From Chara braunii (taxonomy: Eukaryota > Plantae > Charophyceae), in assembly GCA_003427395.1 (NCBI GenBank), contig BFEA01000020.1, positions 5,702,665 to 5,766,664 on the forward strand: 64,000 nt of DNA, in the 5' to 3' direction. The first letter of the stretch is position 1. Every line of letters begins with the position of its first letter. Positions 4,461-60,626 of this stretch are shown here, in pieces. The notes beneath the pieces were generated by a model. The model did no database searches and was not told the DNA's origin. It saw only the letters and a program-made list of their open reading frames with translations. Both the position numbers and the translations under genes were made by a program.

Positions 4461-4690
4461 AGCGCAGTCAATCCCCTCAAGAGAGGGCAATCAATGCTGC
4501 TCCTCCCCTCTTGTCAACTCTGGGCTCCTGGTTGAGATGTATGTGGGATGCTGCACCCGCTTTCCAGCTGGTGCTGCTTCCCACCAATAGATCTGGAACC
4601 ATCTTCAAACGAGAGCTTATTATTGGGGGCTGCTCCTATCACCCCAATAATGGGTCTCTCACAGATGTTTCAGAGGGGGAAAAAACAAAG
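4461..4690 (+). mobile_element. 5'-truncated LINE 3' tail (internal-loop motif, stem-loops, A-rich end)
   Basis: cagtcaatcccctcaagagagggcaatcaatgctg, then gggatgctgcacccgctttccagc...cccaccaatagat...gctcctatcacc. Confidence 0.75.
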
Positions 4691-8557: not shown

Positions 8558-10383
8558 GATTTTTTTTTTCTTCGAAAAACTTCGTGTGTGGGGAAACCAC
8601 TTAACGAGGTGATAGGAGGAGGCTCGTTAAGTGGGCCCCAGCATTTGAAGGTTGAGCCTCCATCTATCGGTGGCGAGCAGCACCTGCTGGAAATCGGGTC
8701 CAGCGTCCCTACACAATGATATGATGAGTGTCAACTGGAAATCGGGTCCAGCATCCCTATTCACTTTTCTTTTTAATTTTTTTTTTTAGCGTCCCTATTC
8801 AATGATGTGTGGAGATGTCATAAGTGTGCATCCATTACAGTAACTATGTGATTTGTGTTCATTTGGTCTGTTTATGTCATGCAAAGCCAAATCCGTATTC
8901 CACCATATCTGCCACGTTACTCTAAAATAGCAGGGGCATTGATTACTTCCCAGCGGCAGGGAAGGATAGACCTCCTGCCCTCGAAGCCTAACCCTAACGA
9001 GAAGCATTCTCATCAACCACCACAACAAGCAATCATCAAAACACTCCAAGAAACAGATCAGACACACGAAAACCCTAAACAACCTACCTCCCACCTGAGG
9101 GACAGTTAACATCCCTTGTTGATTGAAATCTGGGGCCGGATGACTCCAATCAACAGAGGGGACATCTACTATCCTACTCCCATCTGCTGCCAGACATCGA
9201 GGAGCGATTCAACATTGAAATAGAAGGTGGGGGGGACAATAAAATGTTTTTTCATCTCTAATCCCCTCCTCCCTGTCCTCGTCAGATCCCCACTCCTCTC
9301 CCCCTGCGATGATGTTGTTGTTGTTGCGGCTGTTGTCTCTGTTGTCGTTGTCGCCGCCAGCGGTGCAGGTCGTTGTCGTTGTTGTTGTTACTTTTGTTGT
9401 TGATGTCTCAATCGTCGTTGTCGCCATTGTCAAAAACGCAGCTGCCTGGACCGGTGTCTCCACCGTTGTTGGAAATAACGCCGTCGTGTAGTCTTTGTTG
9501 TTGTTACTGTTGACATCATCTTCGACGATGTTGTTGTTGTTGTTGTTGTTGTTGTTTTTGTTGTTATTGTTGTTGTTGTTGTTGTTGTTGTTGTCCACGC
9601 CGCTGTTGCCATAGTCATCACTACCTGCCCCCGTGTCACTATGGATGATAATGTTGTTGTCGATGTTGTTACAGACCTGCTCCCCTGTCTTGTCACTGTT
9701 AATGATGCTGATGTTGTTGATGTTGTTGCTGACCTGCGCACCAGTCTTTGCCGTTGATATCGTCGATGTTGTCGTGTCTCGTTTACTGCCGCTGTTGTAG
9801 TAGCCATCGGAGAGTGCTCGCCCTTCCCTGAAGAGATCGTAGCATCTGCGTATGATCCTGCGCTCCCGCCCCCAATCGATGATGTCATTAAGAAGAGGAT
9901 CCGCCCCCTCCTCTATCGCCCAGATAATGTCCAGCATCGGCATCTGCTGGGACATATCCTCCAGCCAATCAGCCATCGAAGCCCCGTCCCCACGGACCTC
10001 AGATGGGTGGTTTGCTGGAGATGGCATCACCCGCACAATCTCTTGCAGCTGAAGCCACCCATCCTCCAGATCGGACAACCATGCATCCGCTCGCTGTTGT
10101 TGATCTTCGTTCGACGCCATCATACCTGCCATCTTTCCTGCCGCGCCCCGTTTGTTGCATATCGATTGTCGCCCCGCTTCTTCACACCAAACGTTCTCCT
10201 ACTCTCCCGCCAATAGATTCACATGGAGAATCTGCCACGCCAGCATTGCACATGACGTGCAGCGGGACCTGTAGCCTAGCCAAAAACCACCTGGCACGGT
10301 GACATGGCCAGTCACTCGAAGGGCAGTCGGGCCTTGCCGGTGCGATCGCTCAGAGCATTAGCACTCCCCGCGATGCAGCTGCC
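8558..10383 (-). mobile_element. Putative non-autonomous retroelement: single ORF plus LINE-type 3' tail and oligo(A)
   Basis: Minus-strand order is ORF 10132-9209, internal-loop motif 8978-8930, tail stem-loops 8760-8600, A-run at about 8570-8560. Confidence 0.55.
9209..10132 (-). CDS. Hypothetical protein: Trp/acidic helical domain plus Asn/Thr-rich tail
   Basis: Open 307-aa ATG ORF. The N-terminal ~110 aa align with ORF 31267-31758. Confidence 0.6.
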   Translation of the reverse strand: MAGMMASNEDQQQRADAWLSDLEDGWLQLQEIVRVMPSPANHPSEVRGDGASMADWLEDMSQQMPMLDIIWAIEEGADPLLNDIIDWGRERRIIRRCYDLFREGRALSDGYYNSGSKRDTTTSTISTAKTGAQVSNNINNISIINSDKTGEQVCNNIDNNIIIHSDTGAGSDDYGNSGVDNNNNNNNNNNNKNNNNNNNNNIVEDDVNSNNNKDYTTALFPTTVETPVQAAAFLTMATTTIETSTTKVTTTTTTTCTAGGDNDNRDNSRNNNNIIAGGEEWGSDEDREEGIRDEKTFYCPPHLLFQC

Positions 10384-10549: not shown

Positions 10550-10663
10550 CTGACCTGCCCCAGGTGATTCTGAATTATTGGATTTCAACCATCTAGTTCA
10601 TCTGAATTCGAACCCAGGTCAGCAGTTCATGGGTGTATTGACTGAGCTAGGCTCATTGGTTGA
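10550..10663 (-). repeat. tRNA-like head; inverted partner of 8268-8390
   Basis: Minus strand reads cctagctcagtcaatacaccc...gggttcgaattc...ttcagaatcacctggggc. Confidence 0.6.
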
Positions 10664-11884: not shown

Positions 11885-11998
11885 TATATGTGACGCTGGA
11901 CCCGGTTTCCAGCAGGTGACGCTCCCCACCAATAGATGGAGCCCCTCCCAGGGTGTTAGGGGTGCCTGCTCTTATCAGCACCACTAGCACTTCAGGGG

Positions 11999-12459: not shown

Positions 12460-13900
12460 ATACATGAACTGAGATAGGAGGTCCTGAAACCTATCAGATG
12501 GTTCCAAAACATTAGTCCGGGAACGAAACCTACAGAACTAGCCTGCCTGCAATTTCAGGTGGAACACCGTAGTCTGCCAACCGATGACTGGTTGATAGAC
12601 CGCACTTCACTGGAACAGAGCAGGCTGGCCCTACCCTGGTGCAAATTGTGCTGTAAAGCATTTCCGACCAGAAAGCGACCTGAAACAATCGAGCACATCT
12701 TTTTGCAATGCCCAGGGGGCAGTTGGCTCTGGCACTGGTGGGACAGGATGTGGAGCCAACTTGGAAAGGCGGCACCCTGGCCATGGGACTGGAGAGCCCT
12801 GTTATGTGAAGTATGGCCCACAGGCCAACCAGATGACTTAACCTTGGACTCATTCAAACTTGATAGAAGAGTGGTTCTCTGGGCCCATGGCCCACAGACC
12901 AACCAGATGACTCAACCTTGAACTTATTCAAACTTGGTAGAAGAGCGGTTCTCTGGGCCCTCTAGTGGGCACCACTGCACCTACGAGATGGAATGGTTGA
13001 GACTGGAAGGACCCGAATTCACGGACGGAATCCGCCATCAAATACAGATGGAAATAACAACAGAATGGAAGAGCGTGAAAGCTAAACTAGACCACTTCCA
13101 TTCACAGAAGGAAATGCGCCAAAACATCCAACAATTCAGTACAAGCTGGCTTGGGGGGCGCAGGGGGGGAAGGATATGGAAAGTGGAATGGAAAAGGGAA
13201 CAGGAGGGGACACAAGAGGGCTGGGGGATAACCAGGGAGTGGACTAAGTTGGATGCTTCCATTCCAATGCGATCGACGACCGCCTGCTGACTTCCCTGAC
13301 CATTTTCCCCTTTTCCTCACAATGTCTGGTAGACCTGGGATGGTATGGGATGGAATGATGAGCCAAAGGAGGTAGGGAGGGTTTCATCAGCATGAGCCGT
13401 TGTCTGTTGTCTGCATTAGGGTCCAAGGAGGGTTTAGGGTTTAAGGAGGTGAGCAGAAAAACCTGATAGCGGAAAATGCAGATGTCAGTCCCCCTGGGCA
13501 TATCCTTGTCTGCTACAGCCTATTTCTAACCTCCTGTAGAAGACAATGCAGTCTTACGGTCGGTGTACCCGGGCCTCGTCTGACAGCACTGCAGAATGCA
13601 GGGGCAGGGTATCTTGCACATGTATAGAATGCAAAAGGACTCGCTAGTCACTGTTCATACCTGTCGCCCAACAGAAGGGTGAAGAGATGCGGTTTGCATT
13701 CTCAGGTTCACAAGAAGTCCATGAGAAGTGCAGTCAATTACTCATAGAGTGACATGGACAACACAGACATCAATGATGCTGAATTCATGTATTCAAGGGA
13801 CGTTCAACCCGCTTTCCAGCAGGTGATGCTCCCCACTTACAGATGGAGCGGCTATCATCAGGCCTACAACAGGGGCTGCTCATATCACCTCCCCCAGTAG
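12460..13900 (+). mobile_element. 5'-truncated LINE: ORF2 C-terminus (zf-RVT), 3'UTR and tail
   Basis: LPWCKLCCKAFPTRKRPETIEHIFLQCPG (CxxC..H..C). Tail stem-loops at 13797-13890. Confidence 0.9.
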
Positions 13901-24179: not shown

Positions 24180-25043
24180 AGGCGATGGATTACTGGGCGA
24201 GAGCCTCGACCCTCTGGGACTCCCTTTTCTCAACCCCTTTCCCNGAACACCCCATCCAACTTCTCCTTCTGATTAACATCCCTGAACAGCCCCGGAAAGC
24301 GGAAAGGATTTGGTATGGACTCATAAGGAAGGTGACCCTCTGGGTCATATGGAAGGAAAGATGCAGCAGAACGATTGAAGGTGTCTCCAGCTCACGAGAG
24401 CTGACCTGGACGGAGACGAAAGTAATGATACAGGCAGAGATCCTTTGCAGATGGCGGAAGATTAAATTATCTTGGTCGGAAGATGAAGAGCAGCAAAGGA
24501 AGGCTAGACAGAGATTCAGCAGGGCATGGTTGATAGATGGGAAAGTTGCTGAGTTGCGGGACGATCGCATCTGTTGGAAGGACTGGCACAACTCTAGCTC
24601 AGGAAGAAACGCTGGGCAGCAAAGTGCAACGCACGGGCAAAGCACCTCAGGATCAGAACTCTAAAGAGAAAGCTTCGGACTCATACCACCACATTCGGGG
24701 AGATATAGTCGGGGTTTGGAGTTACTCCAATGGAAGGCGAGAGCAAGGGAGGAGAGATTTTAAAAATAATACTTCCAAGTGAGGGGCAGGGTTTAGGGTT
24801 TAGGTTTAGTAGACCTCAAAAGAAGGGAGAAGGCTAAATGGTTTAGGGGATACAGCGACTTACGGGCAGGGCCGATGAGGGAGAGAGCACAGGCATATAG
24901 AAATAATGGGCGAGCTCTTTCTAGATGACATAGCACTATCTGGCAGAACTGGTGTTTTTTCAGGTCTGAGAGGAAAGAGGGAGTCACGGCAAGCTGACAG
25001 TCAATCCTTCACCATTGGTGGAGCAATCAATGCTGTTCAGGGG
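24180..25043 (+). mobile_element. 5'-truncated LINE: ORF2 C-terminus and 3'UTR running into a gap
   Basis: LWVIWKERCSRTIEG...IQAEILCRW...FSRAWL. Internal-loop motif at 24994-25040. Confidence 0.8.
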
Positions 25044-30252: not shown

Positions 30253-30746
30253 TAATAAATCGGCCGGGTACAGGGCGAAGTGGGCCATCAGGCATTCAGG
30301 GGGAAAACAGTCCTTCAGCAGCAGGAATTCGGCGCCTGGTACAGGGTAAAGAGGTTTACTCCCTGCAGCTCAACATCCTGTGCAGACAATCTTCTGAAGA
30401 CAGCATTCATCTCCGTTTTATTTCTACCACAACCTGCTCAGTGGCAGGTCTATTTCTGTTTTTTTTTCCAATGCCCTGCTCAGTCAATCCCCTGGAATCC
30501 AGGGTAATCAATGCTGGCAGGGGTCTCTACATTGTTTATCTGATTACAGTCTGTATATGGGNNNNNNNNNNNNNNNNNNNNNNNNNNNNNNNNNNNNNNN
30601 NNNNNNNNNNNNNNNNNNNNNNNNNNNNNNNNNNNNNNNNNNNNNNNNNNNNNNNNNNNNNNNNNNNNNNNNNNNNNNNNNNNNNNNNNNNNNNNNNNNN
30701 NNNNNNNNNNNNNNNNNNNNNNNNNNNNNNNNNNNNNNNNNNNNNN

Positions 30747-34504: not shown

Positions 34505-35362
34505 ACCCTAACCCACCCTGAGGTGACGTGTGGTCGGCAATAATATTATGCGACTGGCCGCAGGCCCGCCGTAGGAATCCTCCTCGGGCGACCTTCCCGA
34601 GGATGAGTGGAACGAGGGCGGAAATTCTCTTGGACGACCTGGAGGAAAACCCCTCGGGCCCCCAGGACGACCGGAGGAGTGTCTAATGAGGCCCAGAGGC
34701 TTACTCGGCAATTGTTTTGTGGAATCATGTCCGGAAAATCGGATGATTGCTGACAGGTAATCAACTAATGAAGGTGTTTTTTCCTATTGAATCTCCCCAG
34801 TGACATGTGCCTCAATTTTTTTCCCCGGTGGACCGATAAGGTCCAAGCGCAAAGGGGAAGCTCCTCCTCCTGCTGCTGCTTCCTCCTGGCTTTGTGCAGG
34901 TCACAGTCCTTTTTTTCCTTTTTTCTCAACTTCGAAAAGAAAAGAAAAAAAAGCAGCTGTGCACAGAGACTATACCAGGGCAATTACCCGGCTTCAGCTG
35001 TCACAGTGCTGCTGCTTCCTCCTGGCTTTTTTGTGGAAGCCATTGTGGTGACGGAAGTCCACGTGGAGCAGAGGAAATGCTGTGGCGCCGATTTCTGTGT
35101 GATACAGGGAGGGAGGTGTTTGATTTCTCTCTGTTCCTAACAATCACGTCTTCTAACGAAGGGGGCTGAATAGCCTGAATTTTTATGCGCGCTGCATCTT
35201 CCCACCCTTCTCAGACGTCATATATAGAAGGTATATTGGGTCTTGACCCTTGTCAAGTCATGCCAGCTCCTTGATTTGGTGCTGGGATGGGGTGGGATAT
35301 CCACGTGGTCCCCCATTAGAAAGGGAGAGGGGAATATGGTCCAAGTGCCAGCTCTTAAGGAT

Positions 35363-35570
35363 TTTTTTTATTTTTTATTTTTATTTTTTTTAAAACAACA
35401 CCCCCACCGGTGCTAGTGGCTCTGATAAGAGCAGACACCACTACCACCCGGGGAGAGGCTCCGTCTATTGGTGGGGAGCATCACCTGCTGAAAAACGGGT
35501 CCAGCGTCCCATATACAGAGTGTCATCAGAGAACAGCATAGAAACAATCCTGCCAGCATTGATTACCCTG
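35363..35570 (-). mobile_element. Short LINE-tail insertion with 16-bp TSD
   Basis: TSD gccagctcttaaggat at 35347-35362 and 35571-35586, with a poly(A)-like tail and the full stem-loop set. Confidence 0.9.
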
Positions 35571-37252
35571 GCCAGCTCTTAAGGATAAGGAAGCAAGAAA
35601 AAGAAAAAGAAGGAAAAAAAAAAGATAAGGAAGCGAGATGGATGGATGGATGGATGGATGGATGACAGACTGTCCGGCAGAAACAGTGACGGCATGAGGA
35701 TAGCATAGAAACATACACCCATAAATGACAATGCGATCTCGCGCGCACCCGAAAGCAATAACCACGCGATCCTTGCAAAGCTAAATTGTGGAGAGATCGG
35801 CACCGGTTCCTTGAAAAATTTATGAATGCCAACTCAGATTCAAACAGTCTCACTCCGGTGTCATAACCATCTGAGAGCTAAAAATAGCCAAAAGGTGGAA
35901 AAAGTGCAGATATCACCAACAGTCCTCCTTGGCAAAGGACGTATCTGTCAAAATTGGAACGGACATCTGTTAAAAGTGGAACGATAAGGAGAAGATTGAT
36001 CAGCATGGCCCGTGCCTTATCAAGGAGGATGACACGCATAAATTGAGAGAATTGGTCCAAAAAGAAAAAGAAAAAAAAATGGACAGATCGCTGTCATCAT
36101 CCGTGCGATTGGAAGCTTGGGTGGACTAGAGAGGAGTAGTGAAAGGTGTGAATTTTAATGTGAAGTGACTGCTAGCCTTCCTCGAAAGTATTCTGTTCTT
36201 TCCTTTCCTTCCCTTTCTTTCCTTCCTTTTCCTTTTCCTTTTCCTTTCCATTTCCATTTCCATTTCCATTTCTCTTTCTCTTTCTCTTTCCTTTCCTTTT
36301 CTTTCTCCCCCTCCCCTCTCTCCCCCGCTTTTCTTTTTTTACAAATTTGGAACATTTCTCGATTTATGTGTGTCATTCTTGCCTACAGGGGCCATACTAA
36401 TCTTCTCTGTATTGTTCCAATTTTGATGGATGTCCCCAAGGACTTCCCTGCCCTTTCCTTTGTTCACCTTTGAAATCTTTCTTTTCCTTTTCTTTGCTTG
36501 CCCGTCTGTTGTCCTCTCCTTTCCTTGCCTTCCCTTTTCTTCCCACATTCTGTTCACTCAATCTTCTTTTTCTCTTTTAAGTCTTCTTTACTCTCCTCTC
36601 CTCTTCGCCTCTCTCCTATCCTTTCCTTGCTTTGCTTTGCATTGACTAGCCAATTCATATCTCTTCTCCCTTCTTTTTTAAATCTCTCCTAAGGGAAGGA
36701 AGGAAGGAAGGAAGGAAGGAAGGACCAGGTGGCACTGCTGCATAAGGTAATTGAAACAAAGATATCGATTTTGGAATGAAGTGATTGCTGGCTCTTGAAG
36801 AAATAATTCTGTGTCCACCTCCCCTTTCTCTTGTCTCTCTTTCTATTCTCTTTCCTTTTGCTTCTATTTCCTTTCCTTGCCTTGCCTTGCCTAAACAATC
36901 TTTCTTGTCTTCTTTTTTTTTTTTTCCCTGTTCTTTACTCTCCTAGGGGAAGGAGGGGATGCTCCATCAGCTCATGAACGGCGAAGGAATTTGGAGATGA
37001 AGTTTTCAACACTGTGTTGACTTTGAAAAGTTTCTTTCTAACTTTCTTTTCTTTCCTTTCCTTTCCTTCCTTTCCTTTGCAGGATATGTAGCTCCCCACG
37101 AATAGATTGGAGCATTTCATAAAAAAAAAAAAAAAAAAGAGGATAAAGAGTCATTAAAGACATTTAAGTATGAGACTGATATTTGGGTTGTCGTTCTTGA
37201 ATCTCACTCATATTTCTTTTCTCTTACCCTGCGTACGGTCTGTGGAAGTCAC

Positions 37253-43109: not shown

Positions 43110-43246
43110 TGTGTACGGAGATGGACCTGTTTTCCAGCAGGTGATGCTCCCCACCAATAGATGGAGCCTCTCCCCAGGTGCTAGTGGTATCTGCTCTTAT
43201 CAACACCACTAACACTGGTGGGGCATGTTTAAAAAAAAAAAAAAAA
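43110..43246 (+). mobile_element. LINE 3' tail with poly(A)
   Basis: ccagcaggtgatgctccccaccaatagatggagcc...gctcttatcaacacc, then an A-run. Confidence 0.85.
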
Positions 43247-46659: not shown

Positions 46660-47380
46660 AGCGGACCTCGACCTGCGCTCACTCAATGTAAACGGACTTG
46701 CCTCAACAAAGTTCCCCAAAAGACTAGCAATTTTTGACCAGTTAAAAGGAGTAGAAGGGAGAGACTGGCTGCATGTCGTATGCCTGCAAGAAACTCTCCT
46801 CATGAACAATCCAGAACACAATCATATACACAAAGAGATTTGGCCACATCAGGCGTAACTGGTGGAGTCGCCATATGGCTCCCGCCCGGATCAAAAGTGG
46901 AGATGCTCAACTGGGCGGCAGACCAGGAAGAAGGCAGATGGTCTATTTACTGGCAATTGAGTCTTTAAAGGACAAACTACCGGTTGGCATCCCCACGATT
47001 TGGTGGGGGACTTCAATGCGGCTCCGGACCGCTGGCTGGATAGATGGAAAACCCCATCACCCTGCCCAAGTTACATGGAAAATGACGAGAGAATACTCGC
47101 GGAACTTTCACAATCTCTCAACCTCTTCTATACCTTTCGAAGGAGCTACCCCAATGCGCGCCGTTTCACGTGTTATCGCAAGAACACCACAGAGAGAGCA
47201 TCGAAGTCACGCATAGATTTAATCTTAATTTCAGAAGAATTACAAGGGGCCCTTCAAATGTCAGAGATATTCCCCAGCAGCCCCCACCCGGGTCTGGACC
47301 ATGCGCTGTGTCTCGCCACCTTCTCGTTCAGGAAAAAACCTGATCAAGGGAGGGGCTTTTACAAGCTCAATACATCCCTC
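46660..47380 (+). pseudogene. LINE APE-type endonuclease domain
   Basis: SLNVNGL, CLQET, GDFNA, SRIDLILIS and LDH motifs. Confidence 0.95.
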
Positions 47381-47859
47381 TTATCCAACGATCGCTTCAT
47401 TATCTACCTTAAGGATGTGTGGTCCTTCTGGAAGGAACAGAGAGGTCAGATCAACGACGATATATTGTGGTTCAACAACGGTCTTGCTTTTTTGGGCCGC
47501 AAGTGCAACGAGTACTCAAAGCTACTCGCGGTGGGCCGTCATGCCGAGGAGGTAAAGCTACAACATCAACTACAACAACTACAATCACAGGAAGATGAAA
47601 CCGACGACCTTGAACAACAAGTGGAGATAGCTAAGACCATCCAGACTCTAGAAGACCAACTCATGAATCACATGGAACACAGGTGGCAAAGAGTCAGGAT
47701 CCGGGGTAAACTTTCTAAACATAATATGGAAGGAGCAATGAATGCAAAATTCTTTGCAATGGCCAAGGCCAAGACAGGGAGGTCAATAATTGAGGCCTTG
47801 GAAGACCCAAAATGCCACCAAGGGCCCCTCCACACATCTACCGCCGTTTGCGCGAAGAT

Positions 47860-49000
47860 AGCGAGAAATTTTTATCAAACATTATTCACTTCAGGATGAC
47901 AGGACCAAGATAGAGCAGAACGAGCCGGGGAGATGGATGTATTCTTGCGTCCATTAAATAAAACCCTCTCAGAACAACAGAAGGAAGCCCTCGACATGCC
48001 CATATCAAAGGAGGAGATATGGACGACACTGAAACAAATGGAAGGAGGAAAAAACTCTAGGCCTAGATGGGTTTCCTAAAGAATTTTGGGAGGCCATGTG
48101 GGGGAGTATCTCACAAGACCTCATGGATAATTACCATGCGGTGTGGAGGACGGGACAAACAGGCGAATTAGTGGGGCAGGGAGTGTTGACGCTCCTCTAC
48201 AAGAAGGGGGCAAGAACCAATATCAGGAACTACAGAGGGCTCACAATGGTCTACAAGCTGGTAGCGAAAGCGCTAGCTAACCGTATGACACCAATAATGG
48301 CGGACATCATCCACCCGGACCAAACTGGTTTTATCCAGGGCGGAAATATTCAAGATAACATCCTCCTCGTTAATGAGATGATTAAACTAACAAGGCAGTC
48401 CAAAAACAATGCAGCAATCATCTTTATTGACTTCGAGAAAGCATACGACCATGTAGATTGGTTCTTTCTTGACAAGTGCCTGGAAAAACTTAATTTTGGG
48501 ATATACTTCAAACGCTGGATTGAGATTCTCCACGCAAATGGGACGACCAGGGTCATGGTGAACGGCAATTTACCCCCCCCTATATGCCTCCAGAGATCAG
48601 TCAGACAAGGAGACCCTATAGCTCCTTATCTCTTCGTCATAGTCATGGAGGCACTAGCTGCCAACTTAAGGACCCACAAAGACATCCAAAGAATTCAAGT
48701 TGTAGCAATACCCAAAGAGGTAATCCCCGTGTGCTCCTTGTTTGCTGATGACCTGACACTGATGGTGGACGCATCAAGAGAGTCAATGGAAGAGGTACAA
48801 TACATGATGAATCGCTTCTGTAAACTATTAGATATGACAGTCAAATGAGGAAACAAAACTTTGGGATGGTGGATACCCCACCAAGGAGGGAGACCCCCCG
48901 AACAACCCAGAATCAATTGACTCCCCAAGGAAGCCCCCATCAGAGTGTTGGGTATCTCCATGACAGCAGAGGGCAGACCGCCAACAAACAATGATTGAAT
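47860..49000 (+). pseudogene. LINE reverse transcriptase domain (stops and frameshifts)
   Basis: NYRGLT, QTGFIQG, DFEKAYD, RQGDPIAPYLF and FADD motifs. Confidence 0.96.
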
Positions 49001-52000
49001 TTCTACCCCGCCCCTGGCTAAAATGACCCTTTGGAGAGACAAGCACACCTCATTGTTTGGACGTGCACTGATTATCAAACAACGTGGTTCTGGCCTCAAT
49101 GTGGTACAAATCTGCTACTTGGGCTTTGGATAAGAATGCCCTACACCCCCTGAAGCGTCAGATAGCCGCCTTTCTGTGGCGTGGAGATCATGAGAAACAC
49201 AATGTAATCAGTCGGGTAGCATGACATTCCATAATCCAACCAAAAACGAAAGGGGGTTTGGGCATTATTGACCCCCTGATACAAACTAAAGTGCTGACAC
49301 TACAATGGCTCAAAAACCTTCTATTTAAGCCTGATGTTCCCTGGAGAGGATTAGCCCTGGAACAAATCTCCAGATTAGCACCACAAACACCGGTCGGAAC
49401 CGACCCACTGACGAGGTTGGAAAATAGGGGATGACCCATTCCAGGACCGAGATCGCGACAAAGGGACCCCCGTCCTGACTGCCCTAGGTAAGCAGTCAGG
49501 GCGGACATACGCAATGATCCATTCTGGCCCACCCTCTTCAAAACATGGAGAAGTCTCTCTCTGCTGGACAGGACAGCGCCAAAAAGATGGGAGGAGGTAG
49601 CCCGCCAACCCCTTTTTGAAAACAGATGGGTGGTGGACTTGAAGGGCCAGATGCTCCCTTGCACATATCCTCCCTGGCAGAGTTGGGTCAAGAGAGGGAT
49701 AATAAGGATAAAGGATATATGGGACGTTGATAAAAAGGAGTGGATAGGACCCGACCAGCTACGAGCGAGACTGCCGTACTGCCACCGACCATACAAAGCC
49801 CTGGAAACGCTGGTAGAAATGATCCCACTAGCATGGTGGAGGATACTCCGTAGGGGCCCAACCTTGCAAAAATCAGACTGGGTAGCTATTAGAAACCGGC
49901 AAGGATGTGTGGGCAAGGTAGTCCGCTGCCCCCCGGATGGAACGGTAGTGGTGCATCTCTCTCCACTGAGGCAAGACAATGTTATCCAAGAATGTCCACT
50001 GAGGCAAGACAATGTTATCCAAGAATGCTCACTAGAAGAAGCGTTGACATGCCAAATAGAAGAGGTATATAGAATCAGAGTACTCCATGAACGTGAGCAA
50101 AGGATAGCCTACTACCCCGGTACCCCCATTCACCATCTAGCCCTCGACCCGTTGGAGTGGTCATGGTCAGCACAAGGAAGGCAGGGCAAGAAATTCACCA
50201 AGTCCATATACTCCCTAACAGTCAAATCTGCCTACAAGCTCCTAAGACCAAAAACTGCTCTGCGGGACCAGGTGGAGGTGCGGTGGAGAGACCACCTGGA
50301 CATTAGCAAAGAGGAGTTGAGATCAATTAGATGGTTCAAGATGGCCAAGGCAAAGCCTGCCGAACTGGCCTCACTTCAATGGCAGCTGGAGCACCGCTGC
50401 CTTCCAACAAACAACTGGTTGATAGACCGAACATCTCTAGAACAAAAAGGGCGAGCTCTCCCATGGTGCAGGTTGTGCACAAACGCGTTCCCTTCCCGGA
50501 GGCGACCTGAAACAATTGAACATATATTCCTCCAATGCCCGGGTGCACTCTGGCTATGGAGATGGTGGGACAGGGTATGAGAACAACTAGGAACGAAGGC
50601 CCAGTGGCCCTGGGAATGGAAAGCCTTATTGTGTGAAGCCTGGCCCAAGGACCAGCTAGACCAGATAGACGAATTTACTAGAAATATGTTCAGGATGGGA
50701 CGATGGGCGATTCTCTGGGCACTTTGGAGACGACGCTGCACCTTTGAGATGAAGGGGGCGAGACTGGAAGGACCCGAATTCACGGAAAGTGTCCAGCAAC
50801 TGATCCAGACAGAAATAACTGCAAAATGGAACGATGTCAGAGCACAAATCCAACTTCTCAATAGACGTGAAGAGATCAAACAAAAAATCCAGGAATTTAG
50901 CTCAAGCTGGCTTGGGGGTGCAAACGGAGGAAGGATAGGAATGGTGGAATGGAATGGAGGATACACAACACTAGGGGAGGACCAACAGGGAATGGAGTTA
51001 GTAAGAGACTATCATTTGAGGTTCCAAGAATGGACCAAAGAGGATGCAGCGATCCCATTGAAACCTCCTGAGGCATTTCCGGACTTCTTCCCCCCCCTAT
51101 CTAATTGTCTAGTGGAAACGAAGTGGTACGGAATGGACTCTACACAACTCTAGTTCAAAAAAGAAGGTTTGGGTACTTAACGGGTGGGAGGGGAGGGTGA
51201 GGGACTAGTTTTGGAATAGCAGATATCTGGCGCCCGCTTCAGGGCGAAGAGGTTTACTCCCCTTTCCCAATAGCCTGCTCAGTCAATCCCCTGGACTCCA
51301 GGGTAATCAATGCTGGCAGGAACCCCGTATTTTTTTCCTTGGAACCTCTAAATTCTTTTTGTATATGGGACGTTGGACCCGGTTTCCAGCAGGTGACGCT
51401 CCCCACCAATAGATGGAGCCTCTCCCCAGGTGCTAGTGGTGTCTGCTCGTATCAGCACCACCAACACCAGTGGGGGAAGTTGTCAAAAAAAAAAAAAAAA
51501 AAACATTTATTTTTTTTAGCCGAAGCCGGGTAGTCTTAAGAATGTTTTAGGACTGGGGATTCCTAGCAACTTTGTCTTAGGTGGCTTCAATGGTGTTATA
51601 CTAAGTTACTTGCGGCTGTTCGATGCCAGAACGACCCTGGCTGGTGCTGGGGTGTTGCCCTGTAACCTGCTGATGCAGGAGCGTGAGGCCTGGTAGAGAG
51701 ATCTGGGGATGCTTTGGGGTGGGCATTCCACGGGACAACCAAGGGTTGCTGCTGGGACGACGCTGGTCGGAGCTGGGGTGAGTTGTGTTGCCCTGTAACC
51801 CAGCAGGATGTGGGGGCGTGAGGCCTGGAAGAGCTCGGCAGGGAGTAAAACAGTGTTGGAGAGCTTTGGAAGGGTTTGTTAGGGATTTCGAGGGTTTTGG
51901 AGCATTTGCAGGACCTATGCGGTCTATTCCCATCTATAAAAAAGAAAAAAAGAATAAAAGAACTAATAGGTCCTCATTGAAAAGAAAACAAAAGAGATCC

Positions 52001-52960: not shown

Positions 52961-53393
52961 ATTATTATTATTATTATGAAAAATCTGGAAACTTTGTAAG
53001 AATGTACTACTCACTCACTGCTTGTCCCCATCATGGCAGACAGCAACATTTACTACTTCACCAAGTCGGATTTACCCCTGTTCACCATTCATTGCTCCTC
53101 GGTCAGAGGATGAACTGACATGTACGCCTTACAGTCCTCCTTGCGTTCCTCTCAGTCCAACAGGAACTGAACGGTCAGATTGTGGCAGCCTTTCTGACCA
53201 CCAGGTTCATGCTCTACAGGCAGTCTTTGCCATGAACCTGGTCGTCAGAATGGCCAGGTCCTTGCTGACATAGCATGACACAATGCTGTTCATTTAATGT
53301 CTCCGGCTGTTCATTTAATGTCTCCGGCATGAAGTTCAAAAACTTCTGAAGCGTGTTGTAGGTCTCACCCTTGAACCTTCTTTTGCATCAAAC

Positions 53394-54303: not shown

Positions 54304-55399
54304 CCCAGAGGTCACTTGCTCTAGCCCTTTTTTTTTTTTTTTTTNNNNNNNNNNNNNNNNNNNNNNNNNNNNNNNNNNNNNNNNNNNNNNNNNNNNNNNN
54401 NNNNGTGGTAAGAGAACCACCGGGATTGAGGCTTTGCCTAGCGGGCCGCTCCATCTATTGGTGGGGAGCTACACCTGCTGGAAACCGGGTCCAGCGTCCA
54501 GCCCAACATTCATTGGCCTCCCTTTTTTTTTCCCCTTGTGCAGGGGCCATGCTGTTTCATGGTTGCGCGTAATGGTGTCTTCTGTTTCGTGGTCTCAGCA
54601 GTTCATACAGCGGTCTGAACTGTTGGGATGAGTTTCCGTCCTCCAAACATGAAGCCGCTGATTCACTGGTAAAGTGACATAGTCACATAGGTGATCTATC
54701 ATCCATTCTAGGCTCCTAAGAGTCCTAATTATTGCCAATTATATGGATTTGCATTTTCTTCATAGAAAGTTTGCAACTTGTTGGTCGTCGTACCTTGGTG
54801 TCCTCGTCCATCTTTCATGAGACCATTGGTTGTGGATCTTTAGTGTTGAGGAAGATACCCTAACCGAACTTGACTGGATAGGCAAACAAAGGAATTGGGC
54901 TCCTGTCGCTGTCTATGCTCCTCGAAATCGAGCACCACTCCATTGGGTATGGGTATAATTCTAAATCTTGTAAAGCCACATTTGGTCTGAAAGCTCCTTC
55001 GGGAAGGAAAGCTGTTACTCAGGTTTATGAGGTAAAGGGTTGTAAATAATCTCTTTTCCAGAATCCAGAGTCTGAACTTTCTACCTTCTGGGATTTTTGA
55101 TGATTATGCTGCGGAGCGAATCATGTGAAGGACAGAAGGAAGAAGGTGAAGATGAGACTCTGTTGGACAATCCATAGATTCTTACCGGATAGTGTTCATG
55201 AACAGGGTGCCCCATTCAGGGGTTTCAATGCAACTCTTCATTCAACAGTTCTTTCAAGGACAAGCTATTTCCTAAATCGTGGCATCCTTTCAGTTATTCA
55301 TGTAATTTTTCCGGGGTTATCCAATCCTTATTGATATCATCCTAAATATACCTCACTTCCCAAGTTTCCACACTCCTTTGGTTAAAATGAGGGAAAGCC

Positions 55400-56020: not shown

Positions 56021-56999
56021 AGAGGAAGAGGTGGAGGTATGCAGAGGAGCAAGGACAAACTGGTTAGCAGCATTGAAGACATGAGGTAAAGGAAGAGAGT
56101 TTTTTTTTTTTTTTTTTTTTAACAGAACCTTCTGGTCCTGGCTCCTTTTTCATTCTGGGGAGCATCAGTCCGGTTCCTATTCCCCCGGCAAGTCCAAGAT
56201 TGTACAAAGGTTACTCACTTACACTCCTTCCCCTTATGGTGTGGAGACCCCGAAGACGACATTGATTACTTCCCTGAGGAAGGATGTACCGATCTTCACC
56301 CCTGCCTAAGTTAGCCTGTTCTGGTAGATGCTGGTTGGGACTACTTGGAAATCTCTGGTTTTTTTTCTGGCTTGTCCTCTCTATCAACTGGTACTGTACC
56401 GTATCTGTGTGTTTTTGTGCCAGTGGGTGTGTCAGACTTCCTTATTCTACTTCTAGACTCCTGGGAGTTGTTTGGCTTGGGGGTATCGCTTGAAGCTAAA
56501 ACCCTAACCCCTAGTTTGATTGCTCTTTTGCTGCAGCCTGCTGGTGCTTTCTCTGACTCTTGTTTCCTGGCTATGTCTACTGCTATTGCTCGGTCGGCCT
56601 GAAATTAGTGGTCCATTCTCTGTTTTGGGGTGTAGAGGGTGGGTTGGTAGGGTTGGGAGTTTTGAGTCGATGGTGATTGTGAGATGGTTGCGGAGTGTGG
56701 TTGGTCATGGATTCGTTGCTTTCCCAGTCCTTCACTCTTGCTCTTATAGCTAATCCTTGCTTGTTCCAGTCCGCTCATCTGTCGAGTTCTTCTCTTGCTT
56801 CTATTAGTAGATGTTCGTACATTTGTTCTCCTGGATTGTTTATTAGGTTGAATTTAGTTGTTTCTACTACCGCTTCTAACATTTTTTGTCTCGCTTTCCT
56901 TTTTTTGGCTTCTAGTCGGGATGTTTTGTTAACCCAACTGCTTACTGCCTAGATTACTTTTGGGAAGCTATATAGGATGTCGGTGTTATTGTTTTCCTA

Positions 57000-57880
57000 C
57001 TTGCGGAGTTCCCAAACTTGTTTGATCCCTGTTTTAAAATGGTCGAAGGTGATTATGGAATTGTTTACTTTAAAAAAACTCTTGCTCAGCGTGTTGTCTA
57101 GGGAGAAAGTGAGGTGCAGACCTATTTGACTGTGGTCGAATCCTCCATAGTGGGGGAGCTTGAATATTGATGCCCGTTTAGTTGCGCCCTCCAGCGTTTC
57201 AGAGATGAGGAAGTCTATTATGGAGAATGAGGTTCTACCTTGGGATGTTTTTCTAACGCATGTATAATCCTTTGTTGTTGGGTTTAGCATTCTATATGGG
57301 TCCCTTAGGTTCATTTCTGTGAGGAATTATACCATTACCTGAGCTTCCGATTCCTCCGTTGCTTCCCTAGCGTGTGAAATTCTATCTAATGTCGGTTCTA
57401 TTGTGGCGTTCCAGTCCCCTACTAGGATTATGTGTTTGTATCGTGGACATTCCTGCTTTATTCTTTCAAGGAGAGATCTTCTTTGTGTATTGGTGTTTGA
57501 CGCGTATATATTGAGTAGGGAGATTTTTTCTTCCCTGTAGGCGAAGTCTGTTCTTGTCCAGCGGCCTTCTTCTGTGTCGCTCGTGAAAATTTTTATTGTT
57601 AGCAGTTCGGAGGCGTCTGCTTTCACGTGTACAATTGTTAATACTCCTGCTGAGACTGTTGTGGGGCTCACTGCCCATTCTGCATGCTCGATGTGATTCA
57701 ATCTTCTTAGAATCTCTTTTAGTGTGCTTAGGTGTTCCTCTGTTGTGGACAAATGAGTTTCTTGGATGCATAGGATATTTTGTGGTCTGTTGTCCCACCA
57801 GCCTGTTGTGGCAACGAAACTGTGTCATTTTGCTGGTGTTGACAGGATGGTTGCTAGACCTCTTACATTCCATGATCTGA
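57000..57880 (-). pseudogene. APE endonuclease domain
   Basis: WNVRGL, CIQETH, LNIYASN, VGDWNA, SIIDFLIS and FDH motifs across frames. Confidence 0.92.
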
Positions 57881-57999
57881 TTTCCAACTCTCCTCTTTCC
57901 CTGTTGCTGGCCCTAGGTGTTCTGGTAGCCCAATCGCCTTGTCTCGCACTGATTTGTGTCATTTGTTCAGGTTAGAGGTTTGAAGGTTCTTTGAGTGAT

Positions 58000-60626
58000 A
58001 ATTCCTTTATGGTGAGAGGGTGGGGAGTTGCATGGGGTCCTAGCTTAGTGAGGACTCCCCCGTATCCTCTTCCATTGTGTACTCTAGCGCCTCCATGCCC
58101 TTTCCTTCCTTGTTGAAGGTCTGTGCTGCCAATGTTGTTGCCAGGCTGGCTGCTGCCTGGATCAATGTGGTCTCGGATCCCAGTGTTGTGAAAGGAAGTT
58201 GGGCAATCTCCCACCAGAGTCTCCATTGCAGGTCCTCTCCCAAGGTCATTTCCGGGTCGTACAATGCTACTATTGGACGAGTGTCCAAGATGATTTATTC
58301 CCGGGATTCGCTTTTCTCCCCTAGTTCTTGTACTCCACCAGTTCTATTGCGGTCGGCTTAGCTCCGAGTACGGCCTTTGTCAACAGTTCTTCTCTGCTTT
58401 GACTCTTTTCCAGTCTTAGCAGTGAAAAGCTGGGAGTGGTTACAATCTGCCACTCGTTGGTGATAGAGTTAATTTTTACTGGGAGCATTGTCCTTCAAAG
58501 GAGGAGTGTTATGCTCTCTTGCCTCACCTTCTCCCAGAATGCATATTGTGTGTCTGGTCATTTAGGATTTTTACCGTCGTTGCTTTTAGTCTGTGCTCGT
58601 CGTTGAGGTGACCCAGTCTTTCCACTTGTGCACCCCGGATTTCTGCTTGAAGAACTAGTTGCGTTCTTTGGTCTTCCTCCCTAGTATTGTCCTCTCTCCC
58701 CTTCCCTTCAGTCTCTCTTCCTTTCAGGATTTGTTTTGACCCATCTTTTCCTTGAGACGCTTTTGGATTTTCCTTGAGACGCTTTTGGATATTCCTCCTT
58801 CTTTTGCTTGTTGTACGTTTCGGGTAGAGTTGGCATTCTGTATCTGTCTGATCTTCAGTCGCTGCCTGTTTCCTTTCTTGCATTCTTGCCTTTCTGTATT
58901 TGTTCCTTCTTGGTCTTGCAGTACTGTTCTGCGTAGAACGTTGTCATTTTTTCTTCCTTTTCTAGCGGGTCATAGGGGTTAACAGACACCGGAAAAGGAT
59001 GGATGCAAATTGTTGTTCCAGCCCTTTGCTTGAGTGTTTATTACTCTCTGTAGTAGGCCATTTGCAGCTCGAATCTGGATTCTCTCTCCCTCTTTGCCCT
59101 TTGGATATATTTTTTGAGTTTGTCCAAGGATGCGTCTCCCCAGGAGGCGATCTCTTCTTCGCTGTAAAAGTCTTCTTCTTCCTCTTCCTCCTCCGTTTGG
59201 ATCCTTTTGGTTGTTCCGCTTTTCCCTTCCTCCGGCTTCTTCCTCTTTTCCCCCACCATTGTTTTGCCCTCTATTTCTGTTCCCTGATGATCTTCCTCAC
59301 CTGCTCCCTCCCGTGTCGATTGAGAGTTGTCCACCTTCATTCCTTCTGTTCCCTCCTGTTGTTGTTTATTCATCCTTTGTTGCCCCCTTCTTGAGTATGT
59401 TGATGGCGTTTTCTTCCTTTCTTCCTCTTTTTCCTGTTCTTTGTTTTTTTCCTTCTCTATCAGTTCCTTCTCCGTCATTTCCCCTGTCTCATTCAGGTCC
59501 ATGAGTAAGTCCTTGAGGCAGCGTTCTTCTTGAATCCTTTCTAGATTTAGCATCGGGTCCCTTGTGAAAATTTTTGCTGATTTCTTACCAATTTTCATGG
59601 TCTGCCATCTACTGTTTGACGGGGGGTAAACATCAGGTTTCGGGGTAGGTTCACTTTCCAATACCCAGACCCAGTCCGGGACTGGTAAGTTGTCGTTGAA
59701 GATCCACCCTACGTACTGGCTGATTCTCATGTACCAGAGGCCCAGTTCATCCTCCACTTCCGCCAAAATTGTTTGTTAGAGTACCCTTGGTTTGGCTGTC
59801 TCCAAATTTTTTCGGGCAACTAGGGTTTGTTCCCGTGTGCCCTCTCTTCCTGCACTTGAAGCACGGTGGATTGCATTTGCTGGATATTGTCACCTTGACA
59901 GTTCTGTCTCTCATGATGAAGAACCAGTTTTCAGGCATTTGTGGGGAAATGTTGTTGCCTAAGTCCAGCCAGAATGTCATTGTGTTCTATTGCTACACCA
60001 AGAGGTCTGGCGTTGCGATTATCCATTCCACAATTTTCAGATGGTCATACTCCATTTGCAAGCGTTCCTTAATTGCTTCGTGCAACCCCTCGTGTACGTT
60101 ATCGAATTGAACCCAGAAATACTTTTTCATCAGTTCTTGTCGGTAGCACGAGGTGTCATTTGGAATGGGGTGTCGGGTTTCCACGGATGCACAGTGACTA
60201 CTGAGGAGTTGCAGGTGAAGGTCTTGTTGCTTAGGAAGTCTGCGTAAGACGGATCCTTACAGATTACCATTATCACGTTTCTTGTTCGTGGGTGGAATGA
60301 TACTTTTGGTTCTGTTCCTTGCACTGGTTCCATGCTTTTGAGTTTTTTCCACATCCATTTTGAGTTTTGCTGAGCGGTTCAACTCTTGACTTTTCCTCGA
60401 GAAGGTGAACAATACTGCATGTTTTTCGTGAAATTCGTCCAGTTTCGGAATCTGCTCCTTGGGATATTCGTATACTACCACTTCTTCCTTCATGTGCTCT
60501 TCGACCTCGACTAACTTCACGCTCCTCACTAGTTGTGCTTTGGTCTATTCCACTAGCCAGTCTTGAGTTTCGATTCCCATTCCCTCCATCTCGTTCCTTG
60601 AAGCTCCGTCTCTTGTCTTTTACCAC
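58000..60626 (-). pseudogene. LINE ORF1 with zinc knuckle and C-terminal extension (disrupted)
   Basis: VTVHPWKP..FWVQFDNV (plant L1 ORF1-like) and a CFKCRKRGHTGTNPSC knuckle. Confidence 0.8.

What the first reader, a model, noticed from the sequence alone, without database searches (positions are those of the whole stretch)
51274..51320. Covarying RNA motif with a near-invariant internal loop in the 3'UTRs of divergent retroelements
Seen: seven copies, at 4461-4501 (+), 8930-8978 (-), 24994-25040 (+), 30474-30522 (+), 35549-35571 (-, partial), 51274-51320 (+) and 56252-56297 (-). Each folds as outer stem / internal loop U(C/A)NAUC opposite (U/C)AAUCAAUG / inner hairpin. Stem sequences change almost completely while pairing is kept: inner CCCUC:GAGGG, CUUCCC:GGGAAG, CUUCACC:GGUGGAG, CCCUGG:CCAGGG; outer CCUGC:GCAGG, GCAGG:CCUGC, GAAGA:UCUUC, usually with a 1-nt bulge. 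G-U pairs favour the element-sense strand. Where the downstream sequence is visible, the motif lies about 50-200 nt upstream of the tail stem-loops. Inference: a selected cis-acting RNA element, such as an ORF2p/host-protein binding site, a stability or translation element, or a ribozyme. I cannot match it to a family I know.
Basis: partly seen in the sequence, partly recalled or inferred. Interest (0 to 1): 0.85.

Follow-up and report, generated by a model that had tools for sequence, protein, structure and literature searches.

The report
Conserved RNA fold in algal LINE tails
Several only distantly related jumping genes (LINEs) of the stonewort alga Chara braunii keep the same small RNA fold near their 3' end; its unpaired core never changes while its stems change in matched pairs, so it is a selected RNA signal of a kind not yet catalogued, and its partner is still unknown.

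Summary
The "partial" one is a 5'-truncated LINE insertion flanked by a target-site duplication.

The genome is Chara braunii. In 396 kb of its DNA I found 14 strong copies (covariance-model E 1e-11 to 1e-18) and several decayed ones.

- **Structure:** two helices, the outer one usually with a 1-nt bulge, hold an invariant 5x8-nt internal loop (NNAUC opposite YAAUCAAU). It is closed by U.G (13/13) and C-G (13/13).
- **Covariation:** 14 different inner-stem sequences all pair.
- **Non-circular control:** a loop-only pattern gives 11/11 fully paired matches in Chara, against 7/67 among chance matches in metagenomes.
- **Carriers:** L1-type LINEs whose ORF2 proteins are only about 30-60% identical and whose UTR flanks do not align.
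- **Transcription:** RNA-seq shows the motif transcribed mainly in sense, in many contexts, with matched C>U and G>A changes at one pair and no cleavage ends.
- **Known families:** Rfam has no match.

The 3' tail module also occurs without the motif. I therefore favour a docking site for a shared trans-acting protein serving the LINE mRNA over a reverse-transcription primer signal. The function is unproven.

First-reader notes s1-529558 and s1-572237 report similar motifs elsewhere in this genome.

The parts
51274..51320 (+). Motif copy given in the finding (A type). Outer helix 51274-78/51316-20, bulge 51279, middle helix 51280-83/51312-15, loop strands 51284-88 and 51304-11, inner hairpin 51289-51303.
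   Evidence: Sequence; MFE fold; CM 62-66 bits, E about 1e-17; RNA-seq depth island.
30474..30522 (+). Motif copy of the same family as 51274 (hairpin loop AAU instead of ACU).
   Evidence: CM 65.6-71.8 bits; fold z -3.35.
35549..35571 (-). 3' half of the motif at the 5' end of a 5'-truncated LINE insertion. The 14-nt target-site duplication TCCTTAAGAGCTGG lies directly before it and after the poly(A).
   Evidence: Sequence read; tail match 35401-35517.
4461..4501 (+). Motif copy with inner stem CCCUC:GAGGG and a short outer helix.
   Evidence: CM 46 bits, E 1e-11.
24994..25040 (+). Motif copy (A2 family) with inner stem CUUCACC:GGUGGAG and the bulge on the 3' side. The downstream sequence is lost in an assembly gap.
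   Evidence: CM 51-56 bits.
8930..8978 (-). Motif copy (B type) with 5' loop strand CUAUC, inner stem CUUCCC:GGGAAG and a 7-nt hairpin loop.
   Evidence: CM 32-50 bits; not in the seed of model R1, yet found by it.
56252..56297 (-). Motif copy (B type) with 5' loop strand ACAUC and middle helix CGGU:GUCG. It lies in the 3' UTR of the element at 56089-63347, which has endonuclease similarity but no RT.
   Evidence: CM 55-58 bits; endonuclease hits.
53075..53124 (-). Decayed copy (3' loop strand CAAUGAAU, weakened helices).
   Evidence: CM 15.6-16.9 bits, E 0.015-0.08.
13722..13789 (+). Diverged or decayed copy just upstream of a tail module, in a LINE whose ORF2 C-terminus is 37-68% identical to that of the 51274 element. 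The 3' loop strand is lengthened.
   Evidence: CM E 0.4.
47000..51153 (+). Broken ORF2 of the LINE that carries the 51274 copy: endonuclease piece 47000-47899, RT 48096-48848, zf-RVT piece 49630-50580, C-terminal piece 50629-51153.
   Evidence: Pfam RVT_1 2.3e-29, zf-RVT 1.3e-5, weak Exo_endo_phos; C-terminal piece conserved at protein level in other carriers; ORF end.
51360..51484 (+). Tail module (hairpins) between the motif and the poly(A). This is a separate conserved module, found 35 times in 396 kb and mostly without the motif.
51485..51503 (+). Poly(A) end of the element.
   Evidence: Sequence.

Best explanation
This is a selected structural module of the sense-strand RNA of a group of L1-type LINEs of Chara braunii. 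It lies in the 3' UTR, about 120 nt after ORF2 and 30-60 nt before the terminal tail module.

Two helices that are free to change sequence hold a fixed asymmetric internal loop: 5'-NNAUC-3' opposite 5'-YAAUCAAU-3', closed by a U.G and a C-G pair. That loop is the working surface.

**Shown:** the structure is conserved by compensatory change, the loop is invariant across LINE lineages with very different proteins and flanks, and the motif is transcribed in sense.

**Inferred:** the loop is the docking site of a sequence-specific trans-acting protein that is the same for all carrier lineages. I favour a host RNA-binding factor, or a very conserved part of the LINE ribonucleoprotein, acting on the ORF-bearing LINE mRNA (export, stability, translation or RNP assembly). 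I do not favour the signal that primes reverse transcription. That role fits the tail module better, since the tail lies next to the poly(A) and spreads on many elements that lack this motif.
For: **Structure**
- On 13 copies, 84.5% of cells pair against 66.1% in shuffles (0/500 reach it). The covariation score is 0.52 against 0.23.
- Slid registers give 30-63% paired. The inner helix is 92% paired, with both-side changes at 5 of 6 pairs.
- RNAalifold finds the same structure on its own.
- There are 14 different inner 5' arms among 18 copies and all pair. Swapping partners between copies drops the inner helix from 5.2 to 3.3 pairs and the outer from 7.7 to 5.0.

**Non-circular control**
- A loop-only pattern gives 11/11 Chara matches with both helices, against 7/67 distinct chance matches from metagenomes (Fisher 4e-9).

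**Divergence of carriers**
- ORF2 identity is 29-39% between some carriers and 50-62% between others.
- Upstream UTR flanks do not align.

**RNA**
- Depth is up to 554 and 888 reads over the motif but 0 in the 120 nt before it.
- First mates lie 5-7 times more often on the minus strand, meaning plus-strand (sense) RNA in most stranded libraries.
- Hundreds of reads have differing upstream letters.
- 51290 C>T and its partner 51302 G>A occur at matching counts (256 and 256; 337 and 349). Both are present in both contigs of a run under another organism label.

**Tail without motif**
- Of 35 tail cores, 11 were scored as having a motif upstream. One more, on locus L010, had not yet been searched with the model when that count was made and proved to have one.
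- About 20 of the 23 others show no trace of the motif within 300 nt.
- Most have no ORF2 within 3 kb.
- In each of the three elements where an ORF2 end and a tail are both readable, the motif or a decayed form of it stands just before a tail, although one of these also has a partial tail without it.
Against: - No binding partner was identified, and no RNA-binding domain was recognisable in the ORF1-region reading frames.
- No host mRNA with the motif was found, and nothing tests export, stability or translation.
- The sample is small: 14 strong copies from about five or six lineages in 0.4 Mb of one genome, so the number of independent compensatory events is limited.
- Motif-less tail copies could partly be other LINE families or short truncations, so 'dispensable for priming' is an inference.
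- In stringent LINEs, conserved 3' structures are bound by ORF2p (PMC4176376), and that remains a strong prior for the rival.
Confidence: 0.42

Rival explanations
1. The motif is part of a two-part recognition site for the LINE's own ORF2 protein (or ORF1 protein). Together with the tail hairpins it marks the RNA as template for target-primed reverse transcription, as in stringent-type LINEs.
For: - It lies in the last 210-260 nt of the element, a constant 30-60 nt before the tail.
- In each of the three elements where an ORF2 end and a tail are both readable, the motif or a decayed form of it stands just before a tail.
- The RT-less element at 56089-63347 keeps it.
- Some elements carry two copies.
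- Precedents: ORF2p binds the 3' stem-loop of zebrafish L2 LINEs (PMC4176376), and a monocot L1 lineage has a conserved covarying 3' hairpin (PMC3472496).
Against: - The tail core occurs about twice as often without the motif, with no trace of it in 300 nt.
- The loop is identical in lineages whose ORF2 is only about 30-40% identical, whereas in the zebrafish case specificity lies in family-specific loops (PMC4176376).
- The motif is not at the 3' terminus.
Confidence: 0.27
2. The loop is an RNA-RNA contact or a catalytic or ligand-binding core. It would be a tertiary receptor that docks onto another part of the 3' UTR, a new self-cleaving ribozyme, or an aptamer.
For: Thirteen invariant unpaired nucleotides framed by variable helices is the pattern of ribozyme and aptamer cores. 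Tandem copies in two elements could dock on each other.
Against: - No Rfam ribozyme or riboswitch model matches even at E 10.
- No place in the motif shows many RNA molecules beginning or ending (table 6).
- Most elements have one copy only.
- I found no conserved complement of the loop strands in the two tail types (reading; inference).
Confidence: 0.08
3. There is no function of its own. The similarity would be recent common descent or exchange of a 3' UTR segment between LINE families, and the stems pair because the ancestor happened to be a hairpin.
For: Tail modules are clearly shared and shuffled between lineages, and one B-type unit is flanked by a repeated GACTTGCC-like segment, suggesting module insertion. 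Related sequences can beat shuffles without structure, as the tool's own caveat says.
Against: - Flanks within a few nucleotides of the motif are unalignable while 17 loop and closing positions are invariant.
- Stems differ at up to 5 of 6 pairs yet stay paired, including A-U to U-A flips inside one family.
- Slid-register controls, which keep relatedness, fall to 30-63% paired.
Confidence: 0.06
4. It acts as DNA, for example as a transcription-factor site. The reverse complement of AGTCAATC contains a W-box-like TTGACT.
For: The A-type copies contain the W-box-like hexamer on the opposite strand (reading; the W-box consensus is from my own knowledge).
Against: B-type copies (GGTCTATC, GGTACATC) lack it. 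A DNA site does not explain compensatory stem changes or the invariant U.G position.
Confidence: 0.02

Closest known systems
3' tail stem-loops of stringent-type LINEs (zebrafish ZfL2-1/ZfL2-2; the conserved 3' hairpin of the monocot L1 lineage with LINE1-1_ZM)
   Same: A conserved RNA structure in a LINE 3' UTR, with variable, compensating stem nucleotides and a few strictly conserved unpaired nucleotides. It is thought or shown to be read by a protein (PMC4176376 abstract; PMC3472496).
   Different: Those hairpins sit at the very 3' end, next to the terminal repeat or poly(A), and the conserved letters are in the terminal loop and 3' flank (UCU and CGAG in the monocot L1 case, PMC3472496). 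Here the motif is 128-178 nt from the poly(A), a separate tail module lies in between, the terminal loop is free, and the conserved letters form an asymmetric internal loop shared by lineages with very different ORF2.
ENE (element for nuclear expression) triple-helix modules of plant retrotransposon RNAs
   Same: A stem / internal loop / stem module near the 3' end of a plant transposon RNA that acts on the RNA's fate. In Arabidopsis Evade it protects against deadenylation and supports mobility (PMC12501189, as summarised).
   Different: An ENE works through a U-rich internal loop that clamps the poly(A) tail. The Chara loop strands (NNAUC / YAAUCAAU) have no U run, so they cannot form a U.A-U triplex with poly(A).
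Constitutive transport element (CTE) of simple retroviruses and the NXF1-binding element reported in the human L1 3' UTR
   Same: These are retroelement RNAs that recruit a host export factor through a structured 3' element (CTE: PMC4829213 abstract). That the CTE's conserved unpaired nucleotides lie in internal loops, sometimes duplicated, and that the human L1 3' UTR has an NXF1-binding element, are from my own knowledge (L1 element: Lindtner et al. 2002, not read here).
   Different: There is no sequence or model-level similarity that I could test, and the partner here is unknown. The CTE is about 150 nt with two mirrored loops, whereas this motif is 41-49 nt with one loop.
Conserved 3' UTR stem-loop proposed for human L1 and Alu
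   Same: A stem-loop near the 3' end of L1-clade elements, proposed to help RT recognition (PMC5135761 abstract).
   Different: That proposal rests on positional conservation of a hairpin in a relaxed-type L1. Here there is an invariant internal loop and explicit compensatory changes across lineages.

Membership tests
Any Rfam 15 family | Match to a curated covariance model at or near its gathering score | tested here: not met
   The whole window at gathering thresholds gave only U6 and an LSU rRNA piece. Permissive scans (E up to 10) of three motif regions gave nothing on the motif except a chance mir-55 hit at E 3.5.
Stringent-type LINE 3' tail stem-loop | Hairpin at the extreme 3' end, directly before the terminal repeat or poly(A) | tested here: not met
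   The model match ends 128-178 nt before the poly(A), with a separate tail module between them.
Stringent-type LINE 3' tail stem-loop | Covarying stem with conserved terminal-loop nucleotides | tested here: not met
   The stems covary, but the terminal loop is variable in length (3-7 nt) and sequence. The conserved letters are in the internal loop.
Stringent-type LINE 3' tail stem-loop | Specific binding by the cognate ORF2 protein and requirement for retrotransposition | not testable with these tools
   This needs a binding assay and a mobility assay.
Stringent-type LINE 3' tail stem-loop | Shared with partner SINEs | tested here: inconclusive
   About 20 tail-bearing copies without ORF2 nearby lack the motif. 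Whether they are SINEs was not established.
ENE triple-helix element | U-rich internal loop on both strands able to clamp an A-rich tract | tested here: not met
   The loop strands are NNAUC and YAAUCAAU in 13/13 strong copies, with no run of U.
Small self-cleaving ribozymes (hammerhead, HDV-like, twister, hairpin and others) | Match to the class consensus, and site-specific cleavage | tested here: not met
   There are no Rfam hits. No place in the motif shows many RNA molecules beginning or ending in two oligo-dT RNA-seq runs. Cleavage in vitro was not testable.
Retroviral CTE-like export element | Binding of the host export receptor to the internal loop | not testable with these tools
   This is an analogy only.
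L1-clade LINE (the carrier element) | APE endonuclease, RT and C-terminal zinc-binding domain in ORF2, with a poly(A) end | tested here: met
   RVT_1 at 2.3e-29, zf-RVT at 1.3e-5, weak Exo_endo_phos. Poly(A) at 51485-51503. The best outside relatives are plant and Closterium LINE RTs.

The most novel reading that the evidence does not exclude
The motif is a host-factor landing pad that several LINE lineages of a streptophyte alga have kept unchanged. It would be a LINE counterpart of the retroviral CTE, recruiting the cell's export, stability or translation machinery to an intronless retrotransposon mRNA. If so, the invariant loop identifies a still unknown, sequence-specific RNA-binding protein of Chara, and the same loop might mark host mRNAs that use it.
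Probability: 0.3. Interest if true: 0.72.

Novelty: new variant of a known kind. Interest (0 to 1): 0.55.

Why it matters
Conserved RNA structures in LINE 3' UTRs are the main handle on how these elements choose their template and manage their RNA. Almost all worked examples come from animals, plus one monocot L1 lineage.

This motif is well defined: a 41-49-nt fold with a fixed 13-nt loop. It has clear compensatory evidence and is expressed. It is also shared by LINE lineages that have otherwise diverged beyond alignment, in a genome where transposons dominate. It therefore offers:
- a ready seed for a new RNA family;
- a bait for finding its protein partner;
- a natural experiment, since the tail occurs with and without the motif, for separating template recognition from other functions of a LINE 3' UTR.

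Tried and rejected
**Searches that led nowhere**
- A word-index protein search with the zf-RVT piece found nothing.
- A strict A-type DNA pattern found nothing in the metagenome contigs.
- A general loop-only pattern found 102 loci, about the chance number. The recurring look-alike is a coding region (peptide LIAPHKDVEGMN, with only synonymous differences). I used these loci only as a null set. I took none of these contigs for human DNA.
- The closest LINE relatives outside Chara that I could fetch (Closterium sp. NIES-65 and a turtle) have no motif.
- A full-text search for the loop strings returned only primers and unrelated sequences.
- Pfam on the ORF1-region reading frames of two carriers showed no RNA-binding domain.
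- One look-up returned no DNA because the gene model was too long.

**Tests that did not discriminate**
- Sense and antisense MFE energies do not separate the strands; antisense is as stable or more stable in 10 of 14 copies. The strand call therefore rests on stranded RNA-seq, G.U counts and element orientation.

**Readings considered and dropped**
- T-loop or tRNA T-arm: the partner of the 5' strand is downstream, and B-type copies do not fit.
- Kink-turn or loop E: no G.A pairs are possible.
- Poly(A) signal: too far from the poly(A).
- 5' splice site: lost when Y is C.
- Pairing to the 18S rRNA 3' end: the halves are in the wrong order.

These last five rest on reading the sequences and on my own knowledge of the consensus motifs, not on a tool.
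Full report
**What is there**

In the copy at 51274-51320 the parts are:
- a 5-bp outer helix (51274-78 with 51316-20);
- a bulged U (51279);
- a 4-bp middle helix (51280-83 with 51312-15) that ends in a U.G pair;
- a 5-nt loop strand CAAUC (51284-88);
- a 6-bp inner helix with a 3-nt hairpin loop (51289-51303);
- an 8-nt loop strand UAAUCAAU (51304-11).

ViennaRNA returns this fold as the minimum-energy structure for five of the six full copies and as the centroid for the sixth. It also keeps the fold as a separate domain when the whole 325-nt 3' UTR is folded. The octamer AATCAATG occurs 8 times in the window against 2.46 expected.

The "partial" copy at 35549-35571 is the 5' end of a truncated LINE insertion. 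The same 14 nt (TCCTTAAGAGCTGG) stand directly before it and after its poly(A).

**Source and more copies**

The RT piece at 48096-48848 is 60% identical to a Chara braunii protein (CBR_g8636) encoded on assembly GCA_003427395.1. This confirms the organism named in earlier notes of this scan. I fetched nine more pieces of that genome through annotated RT-bearing gene models, giving 396 kb with the window.

A covariance model built from five window copies found:
- the sixth copy, which was left out of the seed, at E 5e-7;
- four copies in L001;
- two in L006 and one in L007.

A second model built from 12 copies found one more strong copy in L010 and several weak or decayed ones. In all there are 14 strong copies (E 1e-11 to 1e-18). 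Two elements carry two copies 130-165 nt apart (L006 33099-33149 and 32969-33017; L007 6894-6952 and 7063-7113).

**Covariation**

On the 13-copy alignment:
- 84.5% of cells form standard pairs against 66.1% in shuffles (0 of 500 reach the observed value).
- The covariation score is 0.52 against 0.23.
- Sliding the 3' partners by 1-3 columns, which keeps relatedness, gives 30-63% paired.
- The inner helix is 92% paired, with both-side changes at five of its six pairs.
- The U.G pair and the first C-G pair of the inner helix are invariant, 13 of 13.

RNAalifold predicts the same structure on its own.

That alignment was fitted to the model, so I re-parsed 18 copies from the two loop strings alone. 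The 18 copies have 14 different inner 5' arms and every one pairs with its partner (3-7 bp). Outer helices reach 6-11 pairs in the 14 strong copies, with one bulge on either strand. Swapping partners between copies lowers the means from 5.2 to 3.3 (inner) and from 7.7 to 5.0 (outer).

The cleanest control uses one sequence-only pattern (RGTNNATCCYYY, 5-20 nt, RRRGYAATCAATG).
- In Chara DNA it finds 11 distinct matches, and all 11 have an inner helix of at least 4 and an outer helix of at least 6 pairs.
- In the whole metagenome collection it finds 102 loci, about the chance number. Only 7 of the 67 distinct ones reach those values (Fisher 4e-9).
- The recurrent metagenome look-alike is a coding sequence.

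**How divergent the carriers are**

The element with the 51274 copy is an L1-type LINE with weak endonuclease similarity, RT, the zf-RVT domain and a poly(A) end at 51485-51503. Its last reading-frame piece ends at 51153, 121 nt before the motif. That piece is conserved at protein level in other carriers, so the motif is in the 3' UTR.

Between carriers, ORF2 translations are 50-62% identical (51274 element and L001:13559 element). Between other pairs they are only 29-39% identical. Outside the motif the upstream UTR flanks give no alignment between families. Downstream they share only one of two tail modules. So 17 loop and closing nucleotides stay fixed where everything around them has changed.

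**RNA evidence**

Two oligo-dT RNA-seq runs filed under the same organism label were laid on 50600-51520 at 85% likeness.
- Depth is zero in 51096-51188 and close to zero (at most about 1) in 51189-51219.
- Depth rises to 554 and 888 over the motif, falls, and rises again to thousands over the tail core.
- 96-97% of what was laid runs on into unlike sequence. Hundreds of reads stop matching exactly at 51274 with differing upstream letters. The motif is therefore transcribed in many different contexts.
- First mates lie 5-7 times more often on the minus strand, which in most stranded libraries means plus-strand, element-sense RNA.
- Position 51290 (C>T) and its pairing partner 51302 (G>A) vary at matching counts (256/552 and 256/558; 337/883 and 349/892).
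- Both contigs covering the motif in a run under another organism label carry both changes.
- No position in the motif shows a pile of molecule ends.
- One variant (51303 G>C in about 30-40% of the reads of one orientation only) remains unexplained.

**Strand**

G.U cells outnumber A.C cells 9 to 3 at variable pairs, and the closing U.G is invariant. Folding energies do not separate the strands. The sense assignment therefore rests on the RNA-seq orientation, the G.U counts and the fact that the LINE intermediate is the sense RNA.

**Relation to the tail**

The motif lies 30-60 nt before the tail module, and the model match ends 128-178 nt before the poly(A).

The tail core occurs 35 times in the 396 kb. 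Eleven were scored as having a motif upstream. One more, on L010, had not yet been searched with the model when that count was made and proved to have one. About 20 of the 23 others show no trace of the motif in the 300 nt upstream. Most of these have no ORF2 within 3 kb.

Their similarity to the tail begins at the same module boundary rather than at scattered points. This argues that many are different elements rather than random truncations (inference). Three elements have both an ORF2 end and a tail readable; in each, the motif or a decayed form of it stands just before a tail:
- L010, with a strong copy between ORF2 and the tail;
- the element with the tail at 13797, which has a decayed form;
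- the 30147 element, whose ORF2 is followed by a partial tail and only then by the motif at 30472-30524 and a second tail.

In a fourth candidate (tail at 40459) an assembly gap hides the interval.

**What it most likely does**

- **Shown:** a structure maintained by compensatory change, an invariant asymmetric loop, sense transcription, a 3' UTR position, and sharing among deeply diverged L1-type LINEs.
- **Inferred:** the loop is read by a sequence-specific partner common to all carriers.

The tail seems able to spread without the motif, and the carriers are ORF-bearing LINEs and their truncated copies. I therefore favour a docking site for a shared trans-acting protein that serves the LINE mRNA (export, stability, translation or RNP assembly) (0.42).

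The main rival (0.27) is a second part of the ORF2p recognition site. It has the strongest precedent (PMC4176376; PMC3472496).

A tertiary contact, ribozyme or aptamer core (0.08) has no support from Rfam or from read ends. Pure hitch-hiking (0.06) does not fit the contrast between invariant loop, compensating stems and unalignable flanks.

**Comparison with what is known**

Rfam 15 has no matching family.

The nearest kind is the stringent-type LINE 3' stem-loop. The monocot L1 example has a covarying stem, a conserved UCU loop and a CGAG flank in the last 45-50 nt (PMC3472496). The Chara motif differs in position, in having its conserved letters in an internal loop, and in being shared across very different ORF2 lineages.

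It resembles ENE modules of plant retrotransposons in outline (PMC12501189) but lacks the U-rich loop that defines them. The retroviral CTE (PMC4829213) is the closest functional analogy for the host-factor reading, but I could not test membership.

**Verdict**

This is a real, selected, expressed RNA motif. It is a new variant of the known kind "structured cis-element of a LINE 3' UTR", and its mechanism is unresolved.

Limits:
- one genome;
- 0.4 Mb sampled;
- about five or six lineages;
- no search of other charophyte genomes was possible with the collections at hand.

First-reader notes s1-529558 and s1-572237 describe what look like the same or similar motifs on other pieces of this genome. 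I did not see their sequences.

Noticed in passing
window 36341-36443 (-): A full-length U6 snRNA gene or retrocopy (Rfam 81.7 bits, E 3e-19), about 770 nt from the truncated LINE insertion at 35348-35571.
   Followed up: no
window 63568-64000 (-): A fragment matching the bacterial-type large-subunit rRNA model (111 bits, model positions 2283-2646, cut by the window end). It is probably an organelle-derived insertion. A LINE tail core lies inside the matched span, at 63878-63971 (+), where the rRNA alignment has a gap.
   Followed up: no
window 56222-56248 (-); L006 about 32935-32968 (-); L001 about 47420-47450 (-): A second small hairpin follows the motif directly. In B-type copies its loop is AACCAUAA-like. 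In the A2 family it reads UCCUUC-GGCCGUAC-GGAAGGA. It looks like another conserved UTR module.
   Followed up: no
L006 32969-33149 (-); L007 6894-7113 (+): Two elements carry an A-type and a B-type motif in tandem, in opposite order in the two elements. In L006 the B unit is flanked on both sides by a GACTTGCC-like segment, as if a module had been inserted or duplicated.
   Followed up: partly
L008 4803-4839 (+); L005 10021-10060 (+); window 10612-10653 (-); L001 33385-33423 (-): Short hairpins keep the outer helix and CAGUCAAUC...GCUG but lack the inner hairpin and the 3' loop strand (CM E 0.0006 to 0.9). They could be deletion derivatives or chance.
   Followed up: no
35 sites in the window and loci L001, L006, L007, L010 (e.g. 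window 11883-11990, 43122-43223, 54448-54499): The tail core (GGGACGCTGGACCCGGTTTCCAGCAGGTG...) is far more common than the motif. It is hugely abundant in contigs of runs filed under two other organism labels (word depth up to about 80,000).
   Followed up: partly
L001 about 13790-13860 (+): Directly after the 40-nt poly(A) of a motif-bearing LINE comes a tRNA-like stretch (GGTTCAATTCC T-arm-like), possibly the head of a tRNA-derived SINE.
   Followed up: no
window 51303 (RNA reads): G>C at the invariant closing pair in 42% (233/556) and 30% (269/891) of reads whose first mate lies on the minus strand, and in none of the others. It is probably one strongly expressed diverged copy.
   Followed up: no
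all 18 parsed copies: Pairs 1-4 of the inner helix are always pyrimidine on the 5' side and purine on the 3' side, while pairs 5-6 flip freely. This could be descent by transitions through G.U, or a constraint on a purine strand next to the loop.
   Followed up: no
L001 10001-84596; L006 10001-45579: Annotated C. braunii gene models CBR_g8636 and CBR_g22023 span 75 kb and 36 kb and join LINE RT pieces to other RT-bearing sequence (for CBR_g8636, Ty3/gypsy-type RT), so they are chimeric transposon models.
   Followed up: partly
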